Source: Octopus sinensis (lineage: Eukaryota). Taken from it: DNA of 64,000 nt. The stretch lies in assembly GCF_006345805.1 (NCBI RefSeq), contig NC_043004.1:6200001-6264000 (forward strand), given 5' to 3'. Made by a program: the position numbers and the translations under genes. Positions 1-59,109 of the stretch are shown piece by piece (the first letter of the stretch is position 1; every line of letters begins with the position of its first letter). The notes under the pieces are model-generated. The model saw nothing but the letters and a program-made list of their open reading frames with translations. It ran no database searches and was not told the origin of the DNA.

Positions 1-610
1 ATAGCACAGAGTCAAACAAGGCTTTGTGAGTGGATTTAGTAGACAGAAACTGAAAGAAGCTTGTCATGTGTGTATGTATCTATATATGCATGTATGTAGT
101 GTGCATGCATGTGTATGTGTATGTATGCATGTGTGCGTGTGCATATGCGTATGTGTGTATGTATGTGTATGTGCATGCATACATGTGTGTATGTGCATGC
201 ATACATGTGTGTACGTATGTGTGTAAGTGTGTACGTGTGCATGTATGTATGTGTGTGTGTGTGTGTATATGTACATATGTGTTTGTGAGTGCATGCATAT
301 TTGTGTTTCCTTGTCGTGACATTGCATGACAGTTGTATGATTATTATGATACAAGCCATACAGTTCTATATTTAAGCAATGAAGAATTATTTACATTATT
401 TACATTTACAAATATCCGTCAAATGTAAATTATATAAATAAGACACAAGCCATGTTGGTCACTTCCAAATGTCCGTGAAAACACGTCTGGCTATGAGGCA
501 AACACTATCTTGCTTAGAAACAGGTGCAGGTTGGCAATAAAGGTATTCAACTGTTGAAAATCTGTATCAAATTCCATCTGCATGGAAAAGTGGACATTAA
601 AACAATGACG
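1..610 (+). mobile_element. tRNA-head-type SINE with RTE-like tail (head outside the window), central (TG/TA)n expansion at 66-300
   Basis: Shares gctttgtgagtggattt..gaaactgaaagaagc with other SINE copies in the window. Tail ...atggaaaagtggacattaaaacaatga. Confidence 0.7.
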
Positions 611-844
611 AATGAATAACACCTATTCTATAATTTATCTATAAAGAAATCAATAAACTTAAATCTATCAATGAAAAGTAAATTATTGGAAAACTTGGCT
701 GCACCATTTTTAACAATAAAATCTCAACTACTAGCAAGAACATAAACCTGATTTGTGGACAGTCCCTAGAATTGGCCTGCATTAACATGGATCAAACTGG
801 AAACATAACTAGAAAGGTGTAGGCTGTAAGAACAGCAAAATTAA

Positions 845-1245
845 TCATCATCAGCATTGTTTAATGTCTGCTTTCCATGCTGGCATGAGTTGGACGGTTT
901 GACTGAAGTCTGGAGAGCCAGGAGGCTGCACCAGGCTCCAATCTGATCTGGTAATGTTTCTACAGCTGGATGCCCTTCCTAATTCCAACCACTCCAAAAG
1001 TGTAGTGGGTGCTTTTTACATGCTACTGGCATAGGAGCCAGTCAGGGGGTACTGGCATCAACCATGTTCGGATAGTGCTTTTTACGTGCCACCAGCACAG
1101 GAGCTAGTCAGGTGGGTCTAGCATCCATCATGTCAGATAATGCTTTTTACATGCCACTGGCACGAGGGCCAGTCAGTGTGTACTGGCATCAGCCATGTTC
1201 GGATGGTGCCTTTTATGTGTCAGGAGGCACTGGCCACAGCCACAA
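845..1245 (-). mobile_element. 5'-truncated RTE LINE 3' UTR with about 65-bp tandem units
   Basis: Reverse complement of the 58435-59109 tail: (CAT)n, ttccatgctggcatg, ggatgcccttcctaa, then repeated gtgctttttac..gccac units. Confidence 0.8.
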
Positions 1246-3449
1246 TATTGAGTAGCGTTTCACTATTTCTTTTCTGATGAAAAACTTTGCTGAATGTTTT
1301 AGTTTCTCCTCTTCTCACAGCCCAACATACTTCGCTTCAGTTTATATTTAAATGGGACCATGAAGCTATAGCATTTGATGACATATAAAATGCATGTTCT
1401 TTAAAAAATTACCCCAAGTCTGATATGTAAACTTGGGTCTGCCATAAGATAATTTTGCTTAATGTTAAATGTGTGCAATTAAAATAGGGGTATGCCCAAT
1501 ATACCTGTGCATCATTTATGCTATCAAATATGGTATCTCTATGCTTTTGTTTCTCTGAGATTTTGATTCTTCATGACATGAACATCTCAAAAAACCTTAT
1601 GTGGTTTTCTCACAAGACAGTTGTTATACCTAGGTTTTTCTTAATATATAAGCTCAATATTTTTCTGCCTTATTGTATGACAAAAGCACCTATGTACTTC
1701 AAATGACATTTCAACAATAAATGATGATCAACATCATTTAACATCAGTTTTCCATGCAGGCATGGATTGGATAGGATTTGGTAAGCTGTGGGGCTATGTG
1801 GAGCTCTAGTATCAGTTTTGGCACGATTTCTACATCTGGATGCCTTTCTTAATGTCCATCTCTTTACGGTGTATCACAGGTGCTTTTATTCTTTTCTTGG
1901 CATCTTGGCACTAATGTGGTTGCCATATAACTTACAAGACAGAAAAAAAAAAAACCAGAGAAAAATGGAAAAAGCTCTCACTATTAAGTTGGGAAGGCAA
2001 TATTTGGGAAGGAGAGATGCTTTATACCAGTTGCTAAAAGGCTAAAGTTTGATGTAGGGACAAGCAGATGTGCCTTGCTTTAGAGAAGATACGTAGTTAC
2101 TCTGCATTATATAAGGGTGAGTGATAGTAAGTGGGAAGAAGATAAAGATGGTAGTAATGGAAAGTGCCAGAGTAAACTCACAAGGTAGAAGAAGGTGAGC
2201 ATAAGAGAGGAAATGGACAGAGGAACAGTGGGAAGAAGAGGGTGGATAGTAGCACAAAAGCGTGGTTTAATGGTAACTTCTACACAGTAATGCTTCAATA
2301 TTTTCAATTTGATGAAATAGTAAATAAATACTTTTTTTAAATAAATAAAAAATATCAATATTTCTCAACTGTTTGTGGTTATTGCTAGTGCAACATATCA
2401 AAAAGAATAGTTCAGGGGAAGGTTAAAACAGATTGATGGCTAAATATATTAATTTTCACACAACCAATATAGGCTGCCAAATGTTTACATCAATGTATAC
2501 GCATGCATGAATACACACACATGCACGCACACACACACACATCTTCTTTCCTTTCAATTCACTATACAACTACAAACACACACACTCTCTCTCTCTTTCT
2601 CTTGCATCTCTCAGCTTCACTCCCAAAATAAAAAATGACGGCTGAACCATAAATAAATGACCTATTCTATACTAAAGTCAGAACAAAGAACAGAAAACAG
2701 TAGCGCCAAGGGCTTGTAATGAGATGATAAATGGATCGACAAAGCATAAAGGAAAACAAAGGGAAATTTTTCGTTTTTTTTTTTTAGTTGTGTTTACATC
2801 ATTGGTATTATCTTTATCATTTGTATGGTAGTGACGCAGGCATGTCCTTGGAAACTGCAAGAATATCATATTTCCAATCCCACTTTAAATTCTTAGAGGT
2901 CTCATGCTTATGTAAAAAACTAGTATTATAACTATTACTAGCATCATCACCACCATCACTAATCGCTTTCTTATTAGCTACTGTGGCTGTTTTTTTATAC
3001 ATTTACTACTGTGGTAAATACAAGGAAACAAACAGTTAAATAACAAAATGAATAAACAAATAACAAAAAAGGCTGTTAGCAACTTTGTTGAACAAAATTC
3101 TAAGATTTATTCCACACTATTTACTTTGACAAAGGTCTTTTATTTTATTTCTTAAAAGAAACCATATTCTTCAGAATGTATCAAAAGTATTAGGAAAAAC
3201 CTGCCATTGTAAACAAAATGTACACCCAGATGAAGAAAACCAGACTAAACTTTTACCATTAAACACTACACACTACAGAAACCAATTATTGCCATTATAC
3301 TATCAGATCATAGTAAGTGAATAACAGAGATAGGCACATCCACCATATTAGTAGTAACTATTTCAAGAAATTACACAGAATAACCAACCTTACCCAGTTT
3401 TGTCAATTCAAGTTGCGAGGAGTGTAATTTAAGAAAATATCAAACTTAC

Positions 3450-3554
3450 ATTTTCAACAATAGCTAAGATATGTTCGACAGCTTCTTCTTCTTCTCTGAT
3501 GTGCTCTCTAGTAGCAAGAGCAAATGGATCTAAATCCTCATCAAAGGTCTCCAT
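3450..3554 (-). CDS. TRAK: Candidate alternative first coding exon of TRAK (METFDEDLDPFALATREHIREEEEAVEHILAIVEN)
   Basis: ATG at 3554, 35 open codons and donor AAT|gtaagt in phase 0, the same phase as the 11306 donor. Non-repetitive acidic peptide with promoter-like motifs upstream. Too short for the ORF track. Confidence 0.65.
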
Positions 3555-3738
3555 TAAAAACAAAAAGTATAAAAAATTACGCAATTTCTATAAAGGACAT
3601 GGGGATCCGTTCTTCTGCCTACGATGTATCTGATGTAATAATAATCGGCTGCTGCTGCTATGGGAATAATGGTATATAGCACAGTAGTAAGAGAACCAAG
3701 CTAGCTAAGGTTGCAGGAAGCAGACAGAGAGAAAGAGA

Positions 3739-3767
3739 AACTGAGAGAGAGCGGGGAAGGAGGGCGG
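3739..3767 (-). promoter_or_regulatory. Candidate core promoter: Inr TCAGTT (3744-3739), GC box (GGGCGG 3762-3767), GAGA runs
   Basis: The motifs are present about 190 nt upstream of the ATG at 3554. About 8 CpGs survive in 3410-3770 in an otherwise CpG-poor background. Confidence 0.45.
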
Positions 3768-4407
3768 GAGGGAAGGTATGAGGTAAAATTCTGAGTAATG
3801 CTGACAAGAAAGTGTATTAATAAACTGGCTGCTTTCTTCCTCTCCCCATCTCAATTCTAGACCATTCACTCTCACTAATTATTTCTTTGTAAATTATGTT
3901 TTTTTTTTTTTTAAAGAATTATAAAGCAAGTTGCAGAGAGCCAAGAAAAAGCATTAAAATAAACAACTACAATGTAGAAACCAATTTTGTTTTCTTTTTC
4001 TTTTCATTGAAACAATAAAGAATTATCGATTCAAATTTTGGCACAAGGACAGCAATTGGGGGGATGGGTGGGGTGTAAGTTTGTTACATCAACCCCAGTG
4101 TCCCAAAAGGATGAAAGGCAAAGATGACCTCAGTGGAATTTGAACTTTGAACATAAAGACAAATGAAATGCTGCTGAGCATTTTGTCTGGTGTGTTAATA
4201 ATCCTGAAAGCTCATCACTTCACAACAAAGCATTATTGGCATCAAAATTCTAAGATATTTTTACATCTTCTGCTTCAGAGAGTTTTAAAAAACAAAACAA
4301 AAAGCCCCCCCCCCCCAAAAAAAAAACATGAGCATGAATCAGTTAAAGCATTTGGATTTAAGAAAGAATTTGACCAAAGTATGAGGTGTGGAATAAATCT
4401 CAAAATA

Positions 4408-4776
4408 TTTATTCTTTTATTTGTTTCAGTCATTTGACCTCAGGACTTATTTATTCTTTGTAAGCCTAGTACTTATTCTATCAGTCTCTTTTGCTGAACT
4501 GCTAAGTTATGATTGTCAAGTGATGTTGTGGGGACAAACACAGACACACAAACATCATCATCATTGTTTAACGTTCACTTTCCATACTGCACCAGGCTCC
4601 AATCTGATCTGGCAAAGCTTCTACAGCTGGATGCCCTTCCTAATGCCAACCACTCTGAGAGTGTAGCGGGTGTTTTTTACGTGCCACTGGCATCGACCAT
4701 GCTTGAATGGTGCTTTTTATGTGCCACCGGCACAGGAGCCAGTCAGGCGGCACTGGCAACAACCACACTCAAACAT

Positions 4777-4836
<60 letters not shown>

Positions 4837-5012
4837 TATATATATCTATATATGATCTTTTTGCAGCTTCCGTCTACCAAATCCACTCTCAAGGCTTTGG
4901 TCAGCCTGAGGCTATTGTAGAAGACACTTGCCCAAGGTGCCACACAGTGGGACTGAACCCGGAAGCATGTGATTGATAAGCAAACTACTTACCACACAGC
5001 CACTCCTGTGCC
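4408..5012 (-). mobile_element. tRNA-head SINE (cagcatggcc/gactgaaac tail family) interrupted by an RTE tail
   Basis: Head ggcacaggagtggctgtgtggtaag. Body and tail are homologous to 62385-62761. Confidence 0.85.
4556..4764 (-). mobile_element. RTE 3'-tail insertion nested in the SINE microsatellite
   Basis: Flanked by acacacaaacat (4544-4555) and acactcaaacat (4765-4776), an 11/12 TSD. Confidence 0.8.
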
Positions 5013-5735
5013 TATACACAGCCAGGTTAAGCAAAGTTATTAAACAATCATTTCTTTTTCTATCCCTCATCATCAGTTTTACTGTCCAGTTTTCCAATGC
5101 TTGCAAAGGCCATACAGAGTCAGTTGAGGCAGATTTTCTACAGCTGAATGTGTGTCTTGACACTGCATAATTATTACTGTCATACAAGTAATGTCACTTC
5201 TTTCCAATATTCTATGAGAAATAGGTAAAGGTTGGCAACAGGAAGGGCATCCAGCCATAGAAAATCTACCTCAATAAACTCCATCTGACCCATGCAGGTG
5301 AGGAAAAGTGGATGTTAAAATGACAATGATGAGGATTACAAAAACACACACACACACACACAACCAACAAACCCATCATCCACACATAGTACATTTATTT
5401 TCATTACCAGCTAGGACAGGATGTTGTGCACAGCACTCGTTCAATGTTATAGAATCTATCCAGTTTGGTTAAGCTCACAAGTTTTGCTACATATATGGCA
5501 CAAAGGTCCTCTCAGCTGATTTCACAAGCAAACAACATTCAACATTTGGAATTACATTCCAAATAAAAACAAACAAAAAGAAAAAGCAAACATACTGCCA
5601 ATATAACTATTGTTTCCGGTGAATGTCTGGATAAAAATCTGGATAATTCAGAATTTGGACTCTAATTAGGCATACAAAAGGACTGACCGGAGCAATAAAG
5701 AGTTTAAACCTGAGAACAATTGTATGACAAAACCA

Positions 5736-6001
5736 ATCATCATCATCATCGTTTAACGTCCGCTTTCCATGCTAGCATGGGTTGGATGGTTCGACTGGGG
5801 TCTGGGAAGTCAGGAGGCTGCACCAGGCTCCAGTCTGATCTGGCAGTGTTTCTACAGCTGGATGCCCTTCCTAACGCCAACCACTCTGTGAGTGTAGTGG
5901 GTACTTTTTACATTCCAGCGACACAGGGACCAGAGGTGGCAGGCAACGGCCACGATCTGCTGGTGCTTTTTATGTGCCACTGGCATGGAAGCCAGTCAAG
6001 G
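5736..6001 (-). mobile_element. 5'-truncated RTE 3' UTR
   Basis: (CAT)n-cgtttaacgtccgctttccatgctagcatggg; close match to 34289-34585 and 47101-47378. Confidence 0.85.
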
Positions 6002-7305: not shown

Positions 7306-9601
7306 ATCCATGTTTCACTATTATTCAGCAACACATTGCTTATCGTTTGTCATTTGTAAAGAAGGAAACCATTTTGCTGCAAATTGAAATATGTGCACGA
7401 GACATTTTGGTACAGCTGTTTTGGCACTGGTATTCTCCACAATCTCACTCACTCTCTCTCCCTCTGTTTAAGTGTGTGAGTATATTTCTTTTTATGTGTA
7501 TGAGGAGAGAGAAAGTATTTGGCAATCTTCTTCAATTAATAAATTGCAATGCCTCTGTGTGTGTATGTGCATGCATGCGCGTCTTCAGTGCCAAAAAGAA
7601 CGGTCACAAAATGCGGCTGGATGTCCAGCCAGCCATGCCAAATCATCAGTGTCCAAACAGCCATGCCAAATTGTCTCATTTTGCTAATACTTTCCCATCT
7701 GCTTGTGATAATATCCACTATATTTACCACTAGGCTTATTTCCAACGCTAATACCACTTAGCATTGCTTCTAGTAAACTCTCTGAGCAAATATTTTACCT
7801 TCACATCCAATCCTGTTCCTATCAACCAATCAGATTTCATTGCACCGTTTTTGCAGTTATTTAGTCACTGACAACACAGCTTTGACTGCAATGTTATTTA
7901 GCAATAACATTACAAAGTAAATTTGTAGTCAAATAACTGAAGTTATAATAGTAACTGACAGAGAAGTAAATCTAAAAATATTATCTAAACAACCAAGAAA
8001 GTTAGCAGCTTTTAGAAGAAAGTTTGGAAATATTTGCAACAAATATGTCACTAAGATAATTTGAAGTGGTTATATCTCAGGTTTACTTGAATAAAATAAC
8101 ATGATAAGGTACAGAAATTAGTTATTAGATATTTACTTAATATGTTTGGTCTTATAAGGAAAAACAAAGAAAATTATATAAATTCACTTGCATATTGATA
8201 AAAAAAGAAAGAAAATATTTTCATGATGTTATACAATCTTATCAATATATTTAATGAAGACATTTCATTTGTTTTGTGTGCGAAAGGGTCTGGATTCAAT
8301 CCTCAACATTTCCAGAACATTTTTATACATGCAGCAAGTAACCAGTCCACACTGTAAAGTGGTTGGTGTTTGAGAGGGTATCCAGCTGTAAAAACCCTGC
8401 CAAAATTGGCCTCACCTATGCTTGTGCCATGTAAATAGCACTGCCAGGTGGTTGATGTTAGGAAGGGCATCCAGCTGTAAAACCCATACCAAAACAAACA
8501 CAGAAGTCTGGTGCAGGCTCATGCCTGGCCAGCTCATGTCAAACTGTTCAAGGCAGACGTCAAACAATGATTTTAGCTGAAAATATTGAGATTATAGTAG
8601 GGTAGTTGTGAAAGGCTGGATCTGGTCAGTTTGGCCATAAAACAGAGAGAATATCTGGGCTGGATTTGACTGGTTTAAATGCTAAACGGTCAATATTTCC
8701 TAATTTCTTTAATGTTTTCTGTTTCTTGCAGCCTAACCAGAGGAATTGTATGATAAGTCATTATTCAATATAGAAAGTATATGACTTCCATAGTACAACT
8801 CAGTTTGACCACCCATAGGGCAGAGGACATATCTGAAGTCAAAGTTAATACATAAAAACAGGAAAAATAAAATCATTTTCTGAGCTATGATACTGTATGC
8901 AGTGTGAACATTCAATTTACCACTGAATATACAAATGGCCAGAAATAACTGAAGTCACCATCACCATTTTAATGTCCACTTTATCAGGCTTGCACAGATC
9001 AGACAAAATTGGTTGAGGCAGGTTTTTTCTAAAGCTGGATAACCTTCCTGATGCAAACCTTCACCTGTTCCAAGCAAGGTAATATTTTTCCATTGCTAAA
9101 CATGGTCATTACTTGAGACAAAAAAATTTCACTTGTATGACGATGATGTTCATTTACAGCCTTCACATAATGTCTAGCCAAAGGTACTCACACAAACAGA
9201 GTTTCCTTCTACCACATCAGCCCACAAGGCTTTTCATTGGCCAGGGGCTACAGTAGAAGACACTTACCCAGGGTGACATGCAGTGGGACTGAATCCAAGC
9301 CCACTTGGTTGGAAAGCAAGTTTCTTAACCAGACAGCCATGTCAGCATTTAAAGTAAAGCCAGAGAAAAGAATATCTATATATTATTGATAGAATTTTAA
9401 ATATTATCTTCTACTTATTATTATTGAGCCATTTATGCATTTGTTGCATAGCAACCCCTGGTTAATTTTGAACACTAATTTATTATGCCTGACATATTGA
9501 TACCAATAAATAATGATACATATCCCAGGTGGTGGTAATCAAAGATATGAATGAAGCCTTTCACATTCACAGTAATAAAATTTATGGACGCCTGGCTGAG
9601 A

Positions 9602-9637
9602 AGAGAGAGAGAGAGAGAGAGAGAAAGAGAAAGAGAG

Positions 9638-9709
<72 letters not shown>
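9602..9709. repeat. (GA)n microsatellite, about 108 bp
   Basis: Direct reading. Confidence 0.98.
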
Positions 9710-9712
<3 letters not shown>

Positions 9713-9809
9713 TGACATAGTCAAATGAGAATTAAAAGGACACTGCTCAATGTTAGCAAGGAATATGCAATATTTTTCCTTTACTCAAAGTGGAGTGTAT
9801 GCCTCACTA

Positions 9810-9946: not shown

Positions 9947-11305
9947 GTTATTTCAGAATGGGGCATAAGTAAAAAACAAGTGAATAAAACTTGCAATCAC
10001 TGTGGTTATGATGGGGTATCACATTGAAGGGTTTAGTTACATAAATTGAACCCAGTACTTTTTTGAAAAATCTGGTATTTATTTTATTAGTCTTTTTTGC
10101 TAATCCACTAAGTAATAGGAATGTAAACAAACAAATACCAGTTCTCAAGTGGTGGCAGCAGTGGACAAACACAAACACACACTACAGCCTTCCTTGCAGT
10201 TTTCATCTACCAAGTTTATTCACAAGTCATTGGTCAGCCTGGGGCTATAACAGTCACTTGCCTAAGGTGTCATGCAGAGAGACTGAACCCAAAACCACAT
10301 GGTTGCTAAGCGAGCTTATTAATCACATAGCCATGCCATATACAAACTTTGTCCATTCATAGTGGGGTGCATGCTTATGTGTACACACACACATTTCCAG
10401 CAGTATTCAAGTGTACAGATTGTTAGATGGTGTAGGAATGTTCTTAATGGAGTAGCTGAGGTCAAAATGTTCCATATTTTTGAGAGACTAAGTGGTTCCC
10501 AAGGATGGAATGTCTTGACCTTAGCTACTCAGAATAATGTTAAATAGATGCTTTGATTTTAGATTTACGATTTACTGATGATAAATATAACATCATCATC
10601 AAATGTCTATTTTCCATGCTGACATGGGTTGGATGGTTTGATAGGAGCTGGCAAGCTAGAGAGCTTCACCCAGCTCCAATTGTTTGTTTTGGCAAGATTT
10701 CAACAGCTGGATGCCCTTCTGACTGCCAACCACTCAAGGTGCTTTTTATGTAACACACACATTAAAAAAAAAAAGAGGGGAAAAGAGAAAGAAAGCAAAA
10801 AGACTTTCAGTGATGACCACACCACACCTGTACTTTTTTTTTGAAGAGGTCACCATCCTTAAACCCATTCTAATATAATTGTAAATGACTAAATAAATGA
10901 ATGGTGAATAGGAATGGAGATCCCCCTTCTCTCTATCTCTATCTATCTATCTATCTACCTATCTCTCAGCTAATTTACCTACCTATATTTCCATCTATTT
11001 ATTTCCATTGTCATGGAACCTCATCCAAAAAAACCCCAAAAAAACAATGTTCTCTTCTTCTAAACAAAACCGCCAAAAAACATCTGTTTTATATAAATGA
11101 ACAAGATGTTTATACATTCACAAAATTTTATTTGGTAAGTTCCAGAAACAAAAGAAACCGCTAATAATAATGAAGAAATAAAAAGATTTTTTTTCTTAAA
11201 ATTCTGACGACTTGAGACATATGCAACACTTACTGAGGTTTAACGTACCTATTTCAGAAAACAATCAGGTACGAAACACTAATGAAAACTAATTCCATTG
11301 CTTAC

Positions 11306-11382
11306 CTCTTCGAGCAGACGAGTCACAGCCTCAATATCATTGTATGTTCTAGTCATCTGGGTTACACGCTGCGCGCATAAGA
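11306..11382 (-). CDS. TRAK: TRAK/Milton exon (77 nt; phase 1 in, phase 0 out)
   Basis: A+TC then [25 protein letters not shown], matching [29 protein letters not shown]. Acceptor ttttctgttttcag|, donor GAG|gtaagc. The preceding intron is 11383-39905 (28.5 kb). Confidence 0.97.
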
Positions 11383-11851
11383 CTGAAAACAGAAAAGAAA
11401 GCAATTAATATTATAATGAAATAACATTAAGATGTGAAAAGCTGTTTTGTGTCCCATGACACTGCGACCAAAATAAAATAGGTAACAACAATAAAAGGAG
11501 CTGAAAGATAAAAATTTAATTTAGATTACAGAAAAATTTGGATTGTAAAAATATGAGGGTGTATCAGGAAGTTCCCAAATCAGCCCTGTAAAAGTACAGC
11601 TGTACTCCAACAAATAATGTATTTCATATATCATTTATATTCAAGTTCCATCTCCTTTGAAATAGTTCCCTTGAGAATATAACAGCAATCACAGCTCCAT
11701 CATGTATGTCTCAGAAACATGGCAGAAATCCTCTTCCTGAAGGTTGTTCAATGCTGCCTGTGAATCTTTCAATTTTACTTACTATCTGCCACATCACCAT
11801 CATCATCATTTACTGTACATCTTCCATGGTGGTATGGGTTGGATGAGTCAG

Positions 11852-34585: not shown

Positions 34586-36949
34586 ATATCAAAAGGAAGT
34601 GTTATAATACTGTTCCACATATACAAAAACAGCCATACCAACAATCCAAAATACCTCCATCATCAGCCACTCCACAGATATCATTATGGTCTCGACACCT
34701 GGGCAGTACCATTCAGGGCTTCCACAGATTCCATCTGCCAAATTTATTCACAGGTTGGCCAGAGGCTATTGTAGAAGTCACTTACCCAAGATGCTGTGCA
34801 GTGGGACTGAACCCAAAACCACAAAGTTGCAAAGTGAGCTTCTTAACCACACAGCCATGCTTGCACCTATGAAACTAAGGGCTTTGTTTACAGCACTTAG
34901 CTTTCCCAAGCAGTCACTCCATCTAAATACTAACTAGGTTTGACATTAGTTGACTTTGATGATCAGACAAGAACTGGCATTTTCGATGGGAAGAAAATCT
35001 TCAGAGTATGTCATTATATTACTTTAAAAAAAAATTTATAACATAATTTCTTTAAAAAAAGAAGAAAAATAAACACATTAGAACTAGATTTTTTCCTAGA
35101 ATTGTATTTTTAAATGCATTTTGCACAATAAATAACAAGAAAATACTTCAATAAAAATTACCAAAACAGATCTGCACTTCATTTTAGCCATCACAACTAA
35201 GACCCAATCTGGCACTTTTACCTTTATGTAAGCTGGCACTTTTACCCTAATGAAATAGAATGTATGAGTTTCCAAGTTTTGGAGTTTGGAAGAGCTGTGG
35301 AATGAAACACTTCATTAAAATGATTTTGTTTCTATGACATAATGTAATATAACAAGAATCATTTTTTCTTTCTATGCTTAGCTTTGAAGTAAATTATTAA
35401 CCCCTTCTGGACCAAATGACAAAAAAAAAAATTTAAATTAAAGAATTTGAAGTGATTTAGTAACATGATTAATTTTTGACACTTCTGTCAGGATTTGTCA
35501 GTGACAGTTACTAAACCAACGAAACTTATTCCCCTTAGTTTAGTTAGAAGAACATCTGTTGTGATGATTCATAATACTATGATGAAAAGTTTAATGTAAT
35601 TATGGACACGTTCAGTTAAAGGGCTTTCTCTCTCATAGAATCGAAATGGAATGGGACTGATACCAAAAAACTTATGTTAGACAATAAGACATGAAAGGGG
35701 AGATTAGTAAATAAATGATCGTCTGGACCAAGGGATGTTCCCAATCTCTCTCTCTCTCTTCTACCAAAAGCTAAAATAGACTTTTAGTTAACTGAAGTAG
35801 ACAAGACATGGTCACACCAACGTGAATAAGCCAGCAAAGGCTACAGAGAAAGTGACTGAATTTAGCAATGATAAACTTTACAAGTTATACTCAGTACAAC
35901 TCTTTCATAATTATTATTTTCAGCACTGAACTGTAACTGAATAGTTGGCTGGATGATCATTTCAGTAGAGGAGCAACCTTTATAAACCAGCAACAACTTC
36001 AGTTATGGTAAAAATAAATAAATAAAAAAAGAAAATAATTACCTTTAAGAAGGCAGGAAATTAATAGGAGGAATGTTTATTGAGGATAAGTTAGTAATAG
36101 AGTAAATGTATGTATGTGTACGTTTGTATGTTGGTATATACGTGCATGTTTGTGTGTGCTTGCACATACAGATATTACATACACACTGATTGCATTAAAA
36201 ACTTCAGTTGAGGAAGAGATTCTGATGACGAAAAGGAGAAAACTGGAATGAAATATGACCAAATAACATTGAGAGAGGATAGCAGAACTGAACAAAAAGG
36301 CATGATAAAAAAGATACACAGATAATCACCCTCATCACTTCATTTTAACACCCATTTTTCCAGGCTTGCATAAATCAGATGGAGTTTATTGAGGTAGATT
36401 TTCAACGGCTAGATGCCCTTCATATTGCAAACCTTTACCCATTTCCAAGCAAAGTAATATTTCTCCATGGCCAGACATGTTTTTATGGAAGATTGAAAAT
36501 GAAGAACATTCATTCACAACAATCACACAATGTCAACACAAGGAGAGAGACGTGTGTGCACACAACAGGCTTTTTCTCATTTTCTTTCTACAAGATCCCT
36601 TCATGAGGCTTTAAATGGCCCAGGGCTATAGTAAAAAAACACTCCTCAAGGTATTGCACAGTGGGACTGAACCTGAAACCATGTGGTTGGGAAGCAAATT
36701 TCTCAACTATACAGTCACAATTAATTTAATATGTGATAGTACAGATTTGTTAGATGGAAAAATAAAACTTAAACTGTATTTTCATTAAAAAAAAAACATC
36801 TTTTAGGGATTAAAACGGTTCATCAAGAAAAAAAAAAGAAAAAAATTTTGGCAAAGGAAGACAACTGATTTGTCAATATTTAAGATTGAAAAGAAAATTT
36901 TTAAAAAATAAAGACCTGTATATTTTCGCAGATATAATGGTAAATCCAT

Positions 36950-39905: not shown

Positions 39906-40109
39906 TGAAGTATTTTAAAGTTTCTTCGATTTGTTCAGTAGTTAATTCAAGATCGTCATCCAAAGGAATTAAAGGGGTTTGAATCCAGTCTTCGTTGTCA
40001 TACCCACGGAAATCTGTTATAGTATCAGCCCGAAGTTTGTATTTAGGAATTTGTTCTTCAAGAAGACTTAAGATCTCAACTTCAGGTAAATCTGCCCGGT
40101 TACACACGT
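39906..40109 (-). CDS. TRAK: TRAK/Milton exon, HAP1_N region (204 nt, phase 1/1)
   Basis: Translates (D)VCNRADLPEVEILSLLEEQIPKYKLRADTITDFRGYDNEDWIQTPLIPLDDDLELTTEQIEETLKYF. This is recognisably the TRAK1/Milton N-terminus (DLPEVEIISLLEEQLP.YKLRADT...LTTEQIEETLKYF). Acceptor ttttacag|, donor A|gtaagt. Confidence 0.97.
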
Positions 40110-50269: not shown

Positions 50270-50490
50270 CTGTTATAACACTGGCGTCAGCTCGAGAATT
50301 CATCCAACACTTATCATGGTTGGTTTCATATAATTCAGGCTCAGATTCTTTGGTTCCCAGCTGCCCTTTATCATGTGATGCCAGCTTGACAGAGTTTGGT
50401 AAGCATTCTAAAATACCCACACAGTGGGCAGTAGAAATGTCATTAGTAAGGAGGTATGGTTGCTCTGGTCTCACCAGCGCCTCAAGGCAC
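50270..50490 (-). CDS. TRAK: TRAK/Milton upstream exon (221 nt; phase 2 in, phase 1 out)
   Basis: Acceptor (t)15-ctgcag|G and donor ACAG|gtaact. The frame is open for 73 codons (CLEALVRPEQ...WMNSRADASVIT). The terminal G plus AC of the next exon gives GAC, i.e. D of the conserved DVC motif. An internal ATG (50303) could be the start instead. Confidence 0.8.
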
Positions 50491-57130: not shown

Positions 57131-58434
57131 ACGAAACATAAACTGAGTTTTAATTTTAAATATTTTAAACAGGAAGCTTGTACCATAGAACCAAGGATGG
57201 TCTCAGGTAGTTTTTAATAATTTTGAAAATAGTGAAGAATTTAATAAAATAACTTGTAATTAATTTGGTACTTAGAACATAAATTACATGAAATTTTAAT
57301 GAAAGATTTTAATTTAGATCACTATGAAACAGGAAGTTTGCATCATAGAATCAGGGATGGTCTTATGTTATTTGGTATGAAAAAGGTTAAAATTCATTGA
57401 AAATAATTAATAGGAGTTAAATGATAAAAGTAATAACATCCAATTTAAAAATAATTATCAACTTCACCATTAAAGTGACTAAGAATACAAACACTACCAC
57501 TATAAACTTTATTTTATCCATAAAATTAATCAGCGAAAACTATGGCAGATATTTAATCTTTACTCAATATCTAATTATTCTTTATTCGGATTTTTAATTA
57601 GATGATTTTAGAACAGACATCATCATCATTTGCAACAAAGTTGAATGAAACCTTAAATTAACGAAGGCAAATTCAAATATTAACCAAGCTGCATAATTAA
57701 AAATATCTGTTAAAAGGTACAATAATGGCGACGATGGTGGTGGTGGTGGTGGTGATGATAAAATATGAGAAAGATTGCAAAAAGAAGAAAATGCACATAA
57801 AGGGTTTAATGCAAAAGTTATTTAGAAGAACAAAACCAAAACAGAGAAAATGGTTCCGTGCAACATTTTTACTGCAATAATTAGATGAAAAAGAAAAAAT
57901 AGCAGTAGAGGTTGCAAGCTATATGCTTTATCTAAACATCAAAACCTAACACACACACACAGATGCTAGTAGCCAATGAAAGTCATCTCAGAAGTAATAA
58001 ACATGTGATTCAATCTAATACAGTTTTTATCAAAGAGATTCTTAAAACATCACTTTAGCACATGTCTATAAACTTTAGCAAATGAACTGTTTAAACTGTT
58101 AATAATAACAAGAATATCATCTTAAAATATCTTCTAATAATGGTTCAATAATAAACTCCACACTAGCAGTCTAATCTAACCCCTCCCCCTGCACCTCCAA
58201 CTGCCTCCCAAATAGCAATATATTTCTCTTCATTCAGCAAGGTCAAATACATTAATATCATTAGTAGATAATTATTCTTTTAAGCCTGAGGTTATACCAA
58301 TATCAATTTCAGGAACATTGATGAAATTAATATGGTATCTCAGATACATTTATATTAATATGATTGAAGTCCAACAGCCAACAATGTGATATTAATTATA
58401 CTTCCTGCCTTCAATGTTGATAGATATATTTAAG

Positions 58435-59109
58435 TTGAGGTCTCACTGAGGAAATGACTAGAGACCGAGACCTCTGGAAGTGTGCTGTGCGCGAGAAGAC
58501 CCGGCAGGACAAGTGAGTCCACAACCCGTGGCCTTCTACATGGGATGGAGCCAGCCTACGTATGCATACTTCCCTTCTTGGGACACAAAACTCTACTTGT
58601 GAAGACGTGTTGAGGCAAGTGAGGATCAGAATCGAAATCGATCAATGGAAATTGCGGATGTGCTACCAGTGCCGGTGGCATGTCAAACTCTGCTTGTGAA
58701 GACCTATTGAGGCAAGTGAGGATCAAATCGAAATCGATCAATGGAAATTGCAGATGTGTTACCAGTGCCGGTGGCATGTAAGAGAACTTTCCGTTTCGCG
58801 ACCGTTGCCAGCACCGCCCCGTTTCGTTCCGTTGCCAGCCTCGCCTGGCCCTCGTGCCGGTGGCACATAAAAAGCACCATCCGTTCGTGGCCGTTGCCAG
58901 CTCTGTCTGGCACCAGTGCGGGTGGCACGTAAAAAGCACCCACTACACTCACGGAGTGGTTGGCGTTAGGAAGGGCATCCAGCCGTAGAAACACTGCCAG
59001 ATTTGACTGGGCCTGATGAAGCCTTCTGGCTTCACAGACCCCAGTAGAACCGTCCAACCCATGCTAGCATGGAAAACGGACGCTAAATGATGATGATGAT
59101 GATGATGAT
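58435..59109 (+). mobile_element. RTE LINE 3' end: ORF2 stop, complete 3' UTR and (GAT)n tail
   Basis: 58439-58516 = GLTEEMTRDRDLWKCAVREKTRQDK*. The UTR carries an approximately 96-bp tandem duplication (58588-58684, 58685-58779) and the palindrome ccatgctagcatgg. Confidence 0.88.

What the first reader, a model, noticed from the sequence alone, without database searches (positions are those of the whole stretch)
3450..3770. Hidden intronic promoter and first exon predicting an N-terminally truncated TRAK/Milton isoform
Seen: ATG(3554), 35 codons, then AAT|gtaagt. The phase-0 donor matches the donor of exon 11306-11382, so it can splice to the same downstream exon. About 190 nt upstream are a TCAGTT initiator, a GC box about 20-25 nt before it, GAGA runs and retained CpGs. 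The leader has one 7-aa uORF (3600-3577). The peptide end EEAVEHILAIVEN echoes the [10 protein letters not shown] helix it would replace. Established: the next TRAK exon carries the AAxxG CC1 box of dynein adaptors, and Drosophila Milton has alternative N-termini that differ in kinesin association. Inference: this isoform keeps the CC1 box and C-terminal mitochondrial-adaptor region but drops the conserved HAP1_N start, which could bias motor choice.
Basis: partly seen in the sequence, partly recalled or inferred. Interest (0 to 1): 0.72.

Follow-up and report, generated by a model that had tools for sequence, protein, structure and literature searches.

The report
Annotated alternative first exon of octopus TRAK
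The predicted intronic first exon is real: it gives a short-headed form of the octopus mitochondrial motor adaptor TRAK/Milton, but this form is already in public gene annotations of three Octopus species, so it is a correct call, not a discovery.

Summary
The sequence observation is confirmed. On the minus strand there is an ATG at 3554, 35 codons (METFDEDLDPFALATREHIREEEEAVEHILAIVEN), a phase-0 AAT|GTAAGT donor after 3450, a 7-codon uORF (3600-3577), TCAGTT at 3744-3739 and CCCGCCC at 3768-3762.

The central interpretation is also right. Public proteins start with exactly this peptide joined to KERDLELAARIG: O. sinensis RefSeq TRAK1 isoform X9 (XP_029639958.1), O. vulgaris CAI9726885/86/88/89, and O. 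bimaculoides A0A0L8GQ25 and others with two substitutions. So the exon is not hidden.

New here:
- The frame is under purifying selection (6 synonymous to 2 nonsynonymous changes and an in-frame codon deletion against another octopod; dN/dS 0.08).
- A cuttlefish-type mRNA carries an orthologous first exon spliced to the same acceptor, so the exon is shared by both coleoid branches.
- The peptide is predicted to extend the CC1-box helix.
- The proposed GC box and initiator lie in a 26-nt stretch absent from the related octopod, so those motifs are unsupported.

The isoform keeps the CC1 box, HBS1, the Spindly motif and the Milton domain. Any bias in motor choice is untested. Unlike fly Milton and the other molluscs sampled, the cephalopod short forms join one exon further downstream.

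The parts
3450..3554 (-). Coding part of the alternative first exon: 35 codons, METFDEDLDPFALATREHIREEEEAVEHILAIVEN, phase-0 end
   Evidence: Read. The identical peptide opens annotated proteins P0001, P0002, P0015, P0017 and P0149. dN/dS is 0.08 against L001.
3444..3449 (-). Splice donor GTAAGT
   Evidence: Identical in the other octopod, L001. Its use is implied by the annotated VEN|KERD junction.
3555..3742 (-). Probable 5' untranslated leader; the upstream limit is uncertain (somewhere between about 3716 and 3860)
   Evidence: 89.5% identical to L001. It shares TTACATCAGAT (3638-3628) with the 154-nt leader of Sepia mRNA L004, whose 5' end aligns near 3716.
3577..3600 (-). Upstream ORF MSFIEIA*, with its uATG 46 nt before the main ATG
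   Evidence: L001 has MSSFIEIA* at -46 and Sepia has MK* at -47.
3739..3770 (-). CT-rich tract holding the proposed GC box (3768-3762) and TCAGTT (3744-3739); not conserved
   Evidence: Present in the window. 26 of the 32 positions fall in a gap in L001-L003.
3771..3860 (-). Conserved block upstream of the CT tract; candidate core or proximal promoter
   Evidence: 92% identical to L001, against 79% further upstream. That it is a promoter is inference only.
11306..11382 (-). Canonical exon (I)[25 protein letters not shown], which the alternative exon replaces
   Evidence: It matches HAP1_N profile positions 50-75 at 37.7 bits. Present in canonical proteins P0014 and P0016.
39906..40109 (-). Canonical exon DVCNRADLPEVEILSLLEEQIPKYKLRADT...EETLKYF (start of HAP1_N), absent from the short isoform
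   Evidence: Matches P0014 and P0016.
50270..50490 (-). Canonical upstream coding exon (..CLEALVRPEQ...MNSRADASVIT)
   Evidence: Matches P0016 and P0014.

Best explanation
Window 3450 to about 3742 (minus strand) is an alternative, intron-embedded first exon of the octopus TRAK/Milton gene, presumably with its own promoter just upstream.

Transcripts starting here carry a leader of about 150-190 nt with one short uORF. They start translation at ATG 3554 and splice from the phase-0 donor after 3450 to the exon beginning KERDLELAARIG, which lies outside the window.

The product is the isoform already annotated as TRAK1 X9 in O. sinensis, with equivalents in O. vulgaris and O. bimaculoides. It lacks the first 105 to 188 canonical residues. 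HAP1_N profile positions 1-48 are lost, and the 26-residue helix ILCAQRV...LLEE is replaced. It keeps the CC1 box (AARIG), HBS1 (QLKH), the region corresponding to the kinesin-binding region mapped in human TRAK1, the Spindly-type motif (SLASELE), the Milton domain and the C-terminus.

Residues about 10-35 of the new peptide are predicted to form a helix continuous with the CC1-box coiled coil, so the exon re-supplies an N-terminal extension of that helix.

Shown: exon, frame, junction, conservation, selective constraint. Inferred: own promoter and transcription start, and any change in kinesin or dynein recruitment.
For: - A padded query scored on residues 1-48 found O. vulgaris proteins at 100% identity and O. 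bimaculoides proteins at 96%, all starting with the peptide joined to KERDLELAARIGQTLL.
- Cluster listings give accessions. P0149 is both CAI9726889.1 and XP_029639958.1 'trafficking kinesin-binding protein 1 isoform X9 [Octopus sinensis]'. Others are CAI9726885/86/88 and A0A0L8GQ25/GQ22/GPR6.
- In the O. vulgaris annotation, alternative forms came from PASA updates using Iso-Seq and RNA-seq (PMC10700109).
- Another octopod (Logan contigs L001-L003) keeps the ATG, the frame (in-frame 3-nt deletion) and the GTAAGT donor. It shows 6 synonymous against 2 nonsynonymous changes, dN/dS 0.08, binomial P = 0.0011.
- The block 3860-3350 is 89-94% identical to L001, against 79-81% in the far flanks.
- A spliced 2666-nt mRNA contig from a Sepia-type cuttlefish (L004/P0172) starts with MDVIIKPVHLSCRQNGQRTMDAVDKLLTLVEG|KERDLELAARIG. 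Anchored at the junction and ungapped, its BLOSUM62 score against the octopus peptide is 28-38, reached by 0 to 1 of 20,000 shuffles depending on the length compared. Its leader shares an 11-nt word with the octopus leader and has a uATG at -47 against -46.
- Pfam places HAP1_N profile positions 49-307 on residues 11-262 of the isoform, against 1-307 for the canonical form.
- AlphaFold2 predicts one helix over residues 10-99, with pLDDT rising from 70 to 95.
- The motifs retained are listed.
Against: - A search for 88-280 aa fragments found none, so octopus transcript support rests on the annotation methods as published.
- The transcription start is not measured.
- The proposed GC box and initiator are absent from the related octopod.
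- An untranslated exon further upstream cannot be excluded.
- BLASTP alone does not align the octopus and Sepia peptides.
- There are no functional data for any cephalopod TRAK isoform.
Confidence: 0.9

Rival explanations
1. Chance open frame next to a chance GTAAGT in intronic DNA; not an exon.
For: The bare pattern is common. There are 9 ATG-initiated frames of at least 30 codons ending in phase at GTRAGT in this window, with 2.7 expected by simulation. The 35-residue peptide alone hits no Pfam family.
Against: - The identical peptide and junction appear in annotated proteins of three Octopus species, including RefSeq.
- Substitutions are biased towards synonymous changes and the indel is in frame in a fourth octopod.
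- An orthologous exon is present in a spliced cuttlefish mRNA.
Confidence: 0.02
2. A real exon, but not a first exon with its own promoter. It would be an internal or 5'-UTR-extended exon of transcripts that start at the upstream canonical promoter, with translation re-starting at ATG 3554.
For: - No transcription start data are available.
- TTTATAG|AAA at 3589/3588 could serve as an acceptor.
- The specific promoter motifs are not conserved.
Against: - An in-frame TAG at 3590-3588 blocks read-through from upstream coding exons.
- The Sepia mRNA leader of 154 nt aligns, partly loosely, with octopus genomic DNA directly upstream of the ATG, back to about 3716, with no sign of a splice.
- The conserved block continues to about 3860.
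- CpG observed/expected is twice the window average.
- Every annotated protein starts at this Met.
Confidence: 0.08
3. The exon is a diverged tandem duplicate of the canonical exon 11382-11306 (exon duplication turned into an alternative start), rather than an unrelated sequence that merely forms a helix.
For: - Pfam's HAP1_N alignment runs into the new peptide: residues 11-35 fall on about profile positions 49-74, the same positions as the canonical exon.
- A profile of canonical sequences gains 6 bits for octopus (shuffle p = 0.028) and 9 bits for Sepia (p = 0.003).
- Junction-anchored BLOSUM scores give p = 0.0007-0.06.
- Both exons have the same phase-0 donor.
Against: - The similarity is weak and is mostly a heptad-like hydrophobic pattern that any coiled-coil extension would share.
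- The peptide alone gives no Pfam hit.
- No similarity at the DNA level was looked for or seen.
Confidence: 0.25

Closest known systems
Annotated isoform: trafficking kinesin-binding protein 1 isoform X9 [Octopus sinensis] XP_029639958.1 (= O. vulgaris CAI9726889.1), also CAI9726885/86/88 and O. bimaculoides A0A0L8GQ25, A0A0L8GQ22, A0A0L8GPR6
   Same: The same 35-residue N-terminus, identical in O. vulgaris and O. sinensis and differing by T15M and E23D in O. bimaculoides, joined to KERDLELAARIGQTLL.
   Different: Nothing at the level of the exon. The window simply holds the genomic copy. The isoforms differ among themselves only in downstream cassette exons.
Drosophila Milton N-terminal isoforms A-D (Glater et al. 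2006, PMC2063864) and the human TRAK1/OIP106 alternative N-termini mentioned there
   Same: Alternative 5' exons give divergent N-termini on a common coiled-coil and mitochondrial-adaptor body. In flies the choice changes kinesin heavy chain association: milton-C does not bind it.
   Different: - Fly transcripts converge at residue 129 of milton-A, with Met138 inside the common exon. This spacing matches the VLCxxRVxQM start of the exon equivalent to window 11382-11306. That is my inference; the fly sequence was not fetched.
- The octopus METFDED and MSDLD exons join one exon further downstream, at the CC1-box exon.
- Chiton, abalone, oyster and scallop isoforms sampled here also converge on the VLCxxRV exon.
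Cuttlefish-type TRAK transcript P0172 / L004 (Logan SRR8281687)
   Same: A first exon spliced to the same acceptor. Its C-terminal motif AVDKLLTLVEG compares with octopus AVEHILAIVEN. The leader shares the word TTACATCAGAT and has a uATG at about -46/-47.
   Different: The N-terminal two thirds of the peptide are not alignable. It is 32 codons long, not 35. BLASTP gives no hit.
CC1-box dynein activating adaptors (TRAK1/2, BICD2, Spindly, HAP1)
   Same: The isoform keeps AAxxG (AARIG, residues 43-47), QxxH (QLKH, residue 77) with an acidic patch after it, and a Spindly-type motif (SLASELE). This is the layout described for human TRAK1 (PMC10011603; preprint 10.64898/2026.04.25.720804).
   Different: Only about 42 residues precede the CC1 box, and they are isoform-specific. 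No biochemical data exist for the octopus protein.

Membership tests
TRAK/Milton family | HAP1_N domain (PF04849) followed by the Milton domain (PF12448) | tested here: met
   For P0001, HAP1_N scores 240 bits (profile positions 49-307) and Milton 29.4 bits. For canonical P0016, HAP1_N scores 353 bits over profile positions 1-307.
TRAK/Milton family | Complete HAP1_N N-terminal part (profile positions 1-48) | tested here: not met
   The alternative isoform starts at profile position 49 and the MSDLD isoform at position 75. This is an isoform-level truncation, not a reason to exclude the gene from the family.
Alternative first exon / alternative promoter | Open frame from an ATG with an in-frame stop upstream, and a donor whose phase matches the downstream exon | tested here: met
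   TAG at 3590-3588, ATG at 3554, phase-0 GTAAGT donor. The junction VEN|KERD is seen in annotated proteins.
Alternative first exon / alternative promoter | Transcripts that begin in this exon and splice to the common exon | tested here: inconclusive
   - Direct evidence comes only from the cuttlefish-type mRNA L004.
- For Octopus, support rests on the annotation method for O. vulgaris (PASA with Iso-Seq and RNA-seq). The method behind the O. sinensis RefSeq model was not checked.
- No octopus fragment was found in the protein collection.
Alternative first exon / alternative promoter | Measured transcription start and open chromatin | not testable with these tools
   No CAGE or ATAC data are available. 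The 5' end of the Sepia mRNA aligns near 3716.
   CCCGCCC at 3768-3762 and TCAGTT at 3744-3739. CCCGCCC is unique in the window, whereas TCAGTT occurs 44 times on this strand.
   26 of the 32 positions of 3770-3739 fall in a gap in L001-L003, whose flanks are 89-92% identical.
CC1-box dynein activating adaptor | An AAxxG CC1 box, an HBS1 QxxH/Y motif and a Spindly motif on the coiled coil | tested here: met
   AARIG at residue 43, QLKH at 77 and SLASELE at 282 in P0001.
CC1-box dynein activating adaptor | [quoted passage not shown] | not testable with these tools
   This needs reconstitution with purified proteins.
Milton-type N-terminal isoform series (Glater 2006) | The variants converge at the start of the VLCxxRVxQM exon (milton-A residue 129) | tested here: not met
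   The octopus METFDED and MSDLD forms converge at KERD, one exon downstream. The fly position is inferred from the 129-to-138 spacing given.

The most novel reading that the evidence does not exclude
Coleoid cephalopods have an old pair of internal TRAK promoters (METFDED-type and MSDLD-type first exons) not seen in the other molluscs sampled. They splice directly onto the CC1-box exon, one exon deeper than the Milton/TRAK alternative starts in flies and the other molluscs sampled. The METFDED-type exon re-creates a helix ahead of the CC1 box. It thereby tunes binding of the dynein light intermediate chain or of kinesin-1, giving neurons or other tissues a TRAK form with a different motor balance.
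Probability: 0.2. Interest if true: 0.5.

Novelty: already known. Interest (0 to 1): 0.2.

Why it matters
For the scan, this is a useful positive control. A reader using raw sequence alone recovered a genuine alternative first exon, its start codon, its donor and its splice partner.

Biologically the exon is already annotated, so there is nothing new to claim at that level. The added value is modest:
- The exon is constrained and is shared by octopods and a cuttlefish-type decapodiform.
- Together with a second short first exon (MSDLDTTQSEIFQ), it joins the gene one exon deeper than the published Milton variants.
- It is predicted to extend the CC1-box helix.

These points would help anyone choosing constructs to compare cephalopod TRAK isoforms in motor-recruitment assays.

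Tried and rejected
- Looked for the KERDLELAARIG exon and the MSDLDTTQSEIFQ exon in the window. Neither is present.
- Tested whether 3450-3770 belongs to a repeat family. It does not.
- Searched 1.84 billion representative proteins with the 35-residue peptide. This found only a 49-aa genomic ORF from another octopod (P0012) and one hit of marginal E-value with no aligned stretch (P0013, 3205 aa), which I disregarded.
- Searched for 88-280 aa transcript-derived fragments carrying the N-terminus. None were found.
- Looked up P0001, P0002 and P0162 by exact sequence to get genomic loci. They are not on record, because only the longest product of each gene is indexed.
- The Argonauta hians locus spans 127 kb, so no DNA was returned.
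- The peptide alone against Pfam gave no hit.
- BLASTP of the octopus peptide against the Sepia peptide gave no alignment. Homology was instead shown by scoring anchored at the junction.
- The SRA run numbers were not found in the literature, so the species of L001-L003 and L004 are inferred from sequence identity only.
The in-register alignment is the one the profile finds.

Full report
**1. The observation**

- ATG at 3554, followed by 35 codons giving METFDEDLDPFALATREHIREEEEAVEHILAIVEN.
- AAT|GTAAGT directly after 3450.
- A short uORF, ATG 3600 to TAA 3577, encoding MSFIEIA.
- TCAGTT at 3744-3739 and CCCGCCC at 3768-3762, inside a CT-rich tract.

The canonical TRAK exon at 11382-11306 ends ...LLEE|GTAAGC in the same phase. 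The stop-to-stop frame is only 52 codons, and an in-frame TAG lies 11 codons above the ATG. The segment is single-copy in the window and lies between SINE-like repeat families without belonging to them.

The pattern by itself would not be convincing. Nine ATG-initiated frames of at least 30 codons end in phase at GTRAGT in this window, against 2.7 expected in simulated sequence. The others fall in repeats or low-complexity DNA. TCAGTT occurs 44 times on this strand. CpG observed/expected is 0.54 in 3450-3770 against 0.27 for the whole window.

**2. The gene around it**

The window holds the 5' part of a TRAK/Milton gene on the minus strand.
- Coding exon 50490-50270: ..CLEALVRPEQ...MNSRADASVIT.
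- Coding exon 40109-39906: DVCNRADLPEVEILSLLEEQIPKYKLRADT...EETLKYF.
- Coding exon 11382-11306: (I)[25 protein letters not shown].

The next exon (KERDLELAARIG...) lies beyond coordinate 1 and is not in the window.

**3. It is an annotated isoform**

A query made of the 35 residues, the start of the common exon and padding was scored only on residues 1-48.
- The search returned O. vulgaris proteins at 100% identity and O. bimaculoides proteins at 96%.
- Their sequences begin METFDEDLDPFALATREHIREEEEAVEHILAIVEN|KERDLELAARIGQTLL... The O. bimaculoides versions differ by T15M and E23D.
- Cluster listings give the accessions: CAI9726885/86/88/89 (O. vulgaris); XP_029639958.1 'trafficking kinesin-binding protein 1 isoform X9 [Octopus sinensis]', whose sequence is identical to CAI9726889.1; and A0A0L8GQ25, GQ22, GPR6 and others (O. 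bimaculoides).
- The O. vulgaris genome paper states that alternative splice forms and UTRs were added by PASA from Iso-Seq and RNA-seq alignments (PMC10700109).

The exon is therefore not hidden.

The same listings show at least five N-termini for the octopus gene.
- A long form starting MSLKEL...
- A form starting at MNSRADAS...
- MDLPLYVRKYA|VLCAQRV (O. bimaculoides isoform X11). Its window copy, MDLPLYLRKYT, is at 36949-36916.
- METFDED...VEN|KERD, the form in this finding.
- MSDLDTTQSEIFQ|KERD, whose exon is not in the window.

**4. Independent evidence that the exon is functional**

*Another octopod.* A search of 1.84 billion representative proteins with the 35 residues found a 49-aa ORF, P0012, on three Logan contigs of 1.3-1.6 kb (L001-L003). 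These contigs are colinear with the window, and their peptide differs from those of the three annotated Octopus species, so they come from another octopod.
- The ATG, the frame and the GTAAGT donor are all kept, with an in-frame loss of one Glu codon.
- Of eight substitutions in the coding part, six are synonymous. pS is 0.30, pN is 0.024 and the ratio is 0.08. The binomial probability of six or more synonymous changes out of eight is 0.0011.
- The block 3860-3350 is 89-94% identical to L001, whereas the far flanks are 79-81% identical.

*A cuttlefish-type mRNA.* Among the members of a cuttlefish-like cluster is an 820-aa protein, P0172, from a spliced 2666-nt Logan contig (L004, run SRR8281687). 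Downstream it matches Acanthosepion pharaonis TRAK1. It begins MDVIIKPVHLSCRQNGQRTMDAVDKLLTLVEG|KERDLELAARIG.
- BLASTP does not align the two short peptides.
- Anchored at the junction and ungapped, they score 28 over the last 12 residues and 38 over the last 26. These scores were reached by 0 to 1 of 20,000 shuffles, depending on the length compared.
- The two leaders share the 11-nt word TTACATCAGAT (shuffle p about 0.013).
- All three species have a uATG 46-47 nt before the main ATG.

The exon thus appears to be orthologous in both coleoid branches. In the cuttlefish-type species there is direct transcript evidence for the splice.

**5. The promoter claim**

However, 26 of the 32 positions spanning 3770-3739, which hold the GC box and TCAGTT, fall in a gap in all three contigs of the related octopod, although the sequence on both sides is 89-92% identical. 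These motifs therefore carry no comparative support, and TCAGTT is frequent by chance.

What remains in favour of a nearby start site:
- The upstream in-frame stop.
- The doubled CpG ratio.
- A conserved block reaching about 3860.
- The 154-nt Sepia leader, which aligns (partly loosely) with octopus DNA back to about 3716, with no sign of a splice.

The transcription start itself is unmeasured.

**6. What the isoform keeps and loses**

Pfam places HAP1_N profile positions 1-307 on the canonical proteins, 49-307 on the METFDED isoform (residues 11-262) and 75-307 on the MSDLD isoform. The canonical exon alone matches profile positions 50-75 at 37.7 bits. The 35-residue peptide alone matches nothing.

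The isoform retains:
- AARIG, the AAxxG CC1 box, at residue 43.
- QLKH, the HBS1 QxxH motif, at residue 77.
- SLASELE, a Spindly-type motif, at residue 282.
- The Milton domain.

This matches the layout described for human TRAK1 (PMC10011603; preprint 10.64898/2026.04.25.720804). The kinesin-binding region is mapped there to about residues 100-360 or 110-270 of human TRAK1, which begins close to or just downstream of the junction.

*The 'echo' of the replaced helix.* This is weakly supported, and only in register with the junction.
- A profile built from 51 canonical segments gains 6 bits for octopus (shuffle p = 0.028) and 9 bits for Sepia (p = 0.003) when the alternative exon is added to the common anchor.
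- Junction-anchored BLOSUM scores give p between 0.0007 and 0.06.
- AlphaFold2, run with a 26-sequence alignment, predicts residues 10-99 as one helix, with pLDDT rising from 70 to 95. A break follows at residues 100-118, as described for TRAK1 CC1a. This is a monomer model of a coiled coil, so it speaks only to helical propensity.

Whether the resemblance reflects an old exon duplication or convergence on a coiled-coil pattern cannot be decided here.

**7. Comparison with what is known**

Glater et al. 2006 showed that Drosophila milton makes four proteins with divergent N-termini that converge at residue 129 of milton-A. Milton-D starts at Met138 inside the common exon. Human OIP106/TRAK1 variants converge at the same point. 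Milton-C fails to bind kinesin heavy chain.

The 129-to-138 spacing equals the V-to-M spacing of the conserved VLCxxRVxQM motif that opens the exon equivalent to window 11382-11306. The fly convergence point therefore appears to be that exon. This is my inference; I did not fetch the fly sequence.

In the clusters I could list, the chiton, abalone, oyster and scallop isoforms also converge on that exon, or start at its internal Met ([11 protein letters not shown]...). The cephalopod METFDED-type and MSDLD-type exons join one exon further downstream.

**8. Verdict**

- The structural interpretation is correct: an alternative first exon spliced to the CC1-box exon, giving an N-terminally distinct TRAK isoform.
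- 'Hidden' is wrong, and the named promoter motifs are unsupported.
- The motor-bias idea is a reasonable analogy to milton-C but is untested.

As an item for follow-up it is ordinary. It is an already annotated isoform, with a few comparative details added here.

Noticed in passing
window 36916-36949 (minus): Another short alternative first exon of the same gene: ATG GAT TTA CCA ... ACA G|GT, encoding MDLPLYLRKYT. Its phase lets it join the exon at 11382. It corresponds to O. bimaculoides isoform X11 (XP_052825965.1), MDLPLYVRKYA|VLCAQRV. The donor, GTCTTT, is weak.
   Followed up: partly
outside the window (beyond coordinate 1), seen in P0018-P0020, P0024, P0025, P0027, P0148 and P0159: A third kind of short N-terminus, MSDLD(T/A)TQSEIFQ, also joins directly to KERDLELAARIG in O. 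vulgaris, O. sinensis and O. bimaculoides. Its exon is not in the window.
   Followed up: partly
window 3577-3600; L001 about 491-517; L004 108-116: A uATG sits 46-47 nt upstream of the main ATG in the window, in the other octopod and in the cuttlefish-type mRNA. The uORF peptides differ (MSFIEIA, MSSFIEIA, MK). The position seems conserved, but not the peptide.
   Followed up: partly
window 836-1240, 4551-5000, 5728-6000, 8350-8500, 10583-10735, 11793-11845 and many other places: Families of SINE-like interspersed repeats lie in both orientations through the introns. One recurring translated form is ...LEWLALGRASSCRN...SDWSLVQPP... Related tandem units account for the CpG-richer kilobase at 58001-59000.
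   Followed up: no
window 66-390 and 9480-9780: Long imperfect microsatellites: (TG/CA)-rich at 66-390 and (CT/GA)n at about 9540-9720.
   Followed up: no
window 50270-50490 and upstream: The long isoform's first 21 residues (MSLKELSLTVAVWNRPTIPYR) are not encoded anywhere in the window. That 5' exon must lie beyond coordinate 64000, more than 13 kb upstream of the exon at 50490.
   Followed up: partly
P0179, P0187, P0188, P0196, P0208 (chiton, abalone, oyster, scallop): Several molluscs have annotated TRAK isoforms that start at the internal Met of the VLCxxRVxQM exon (MT(K/R)(T/A)(Y/F)NDI...). This looks like the same start as Drosophila milton-D (Met138).
   Followed up: no
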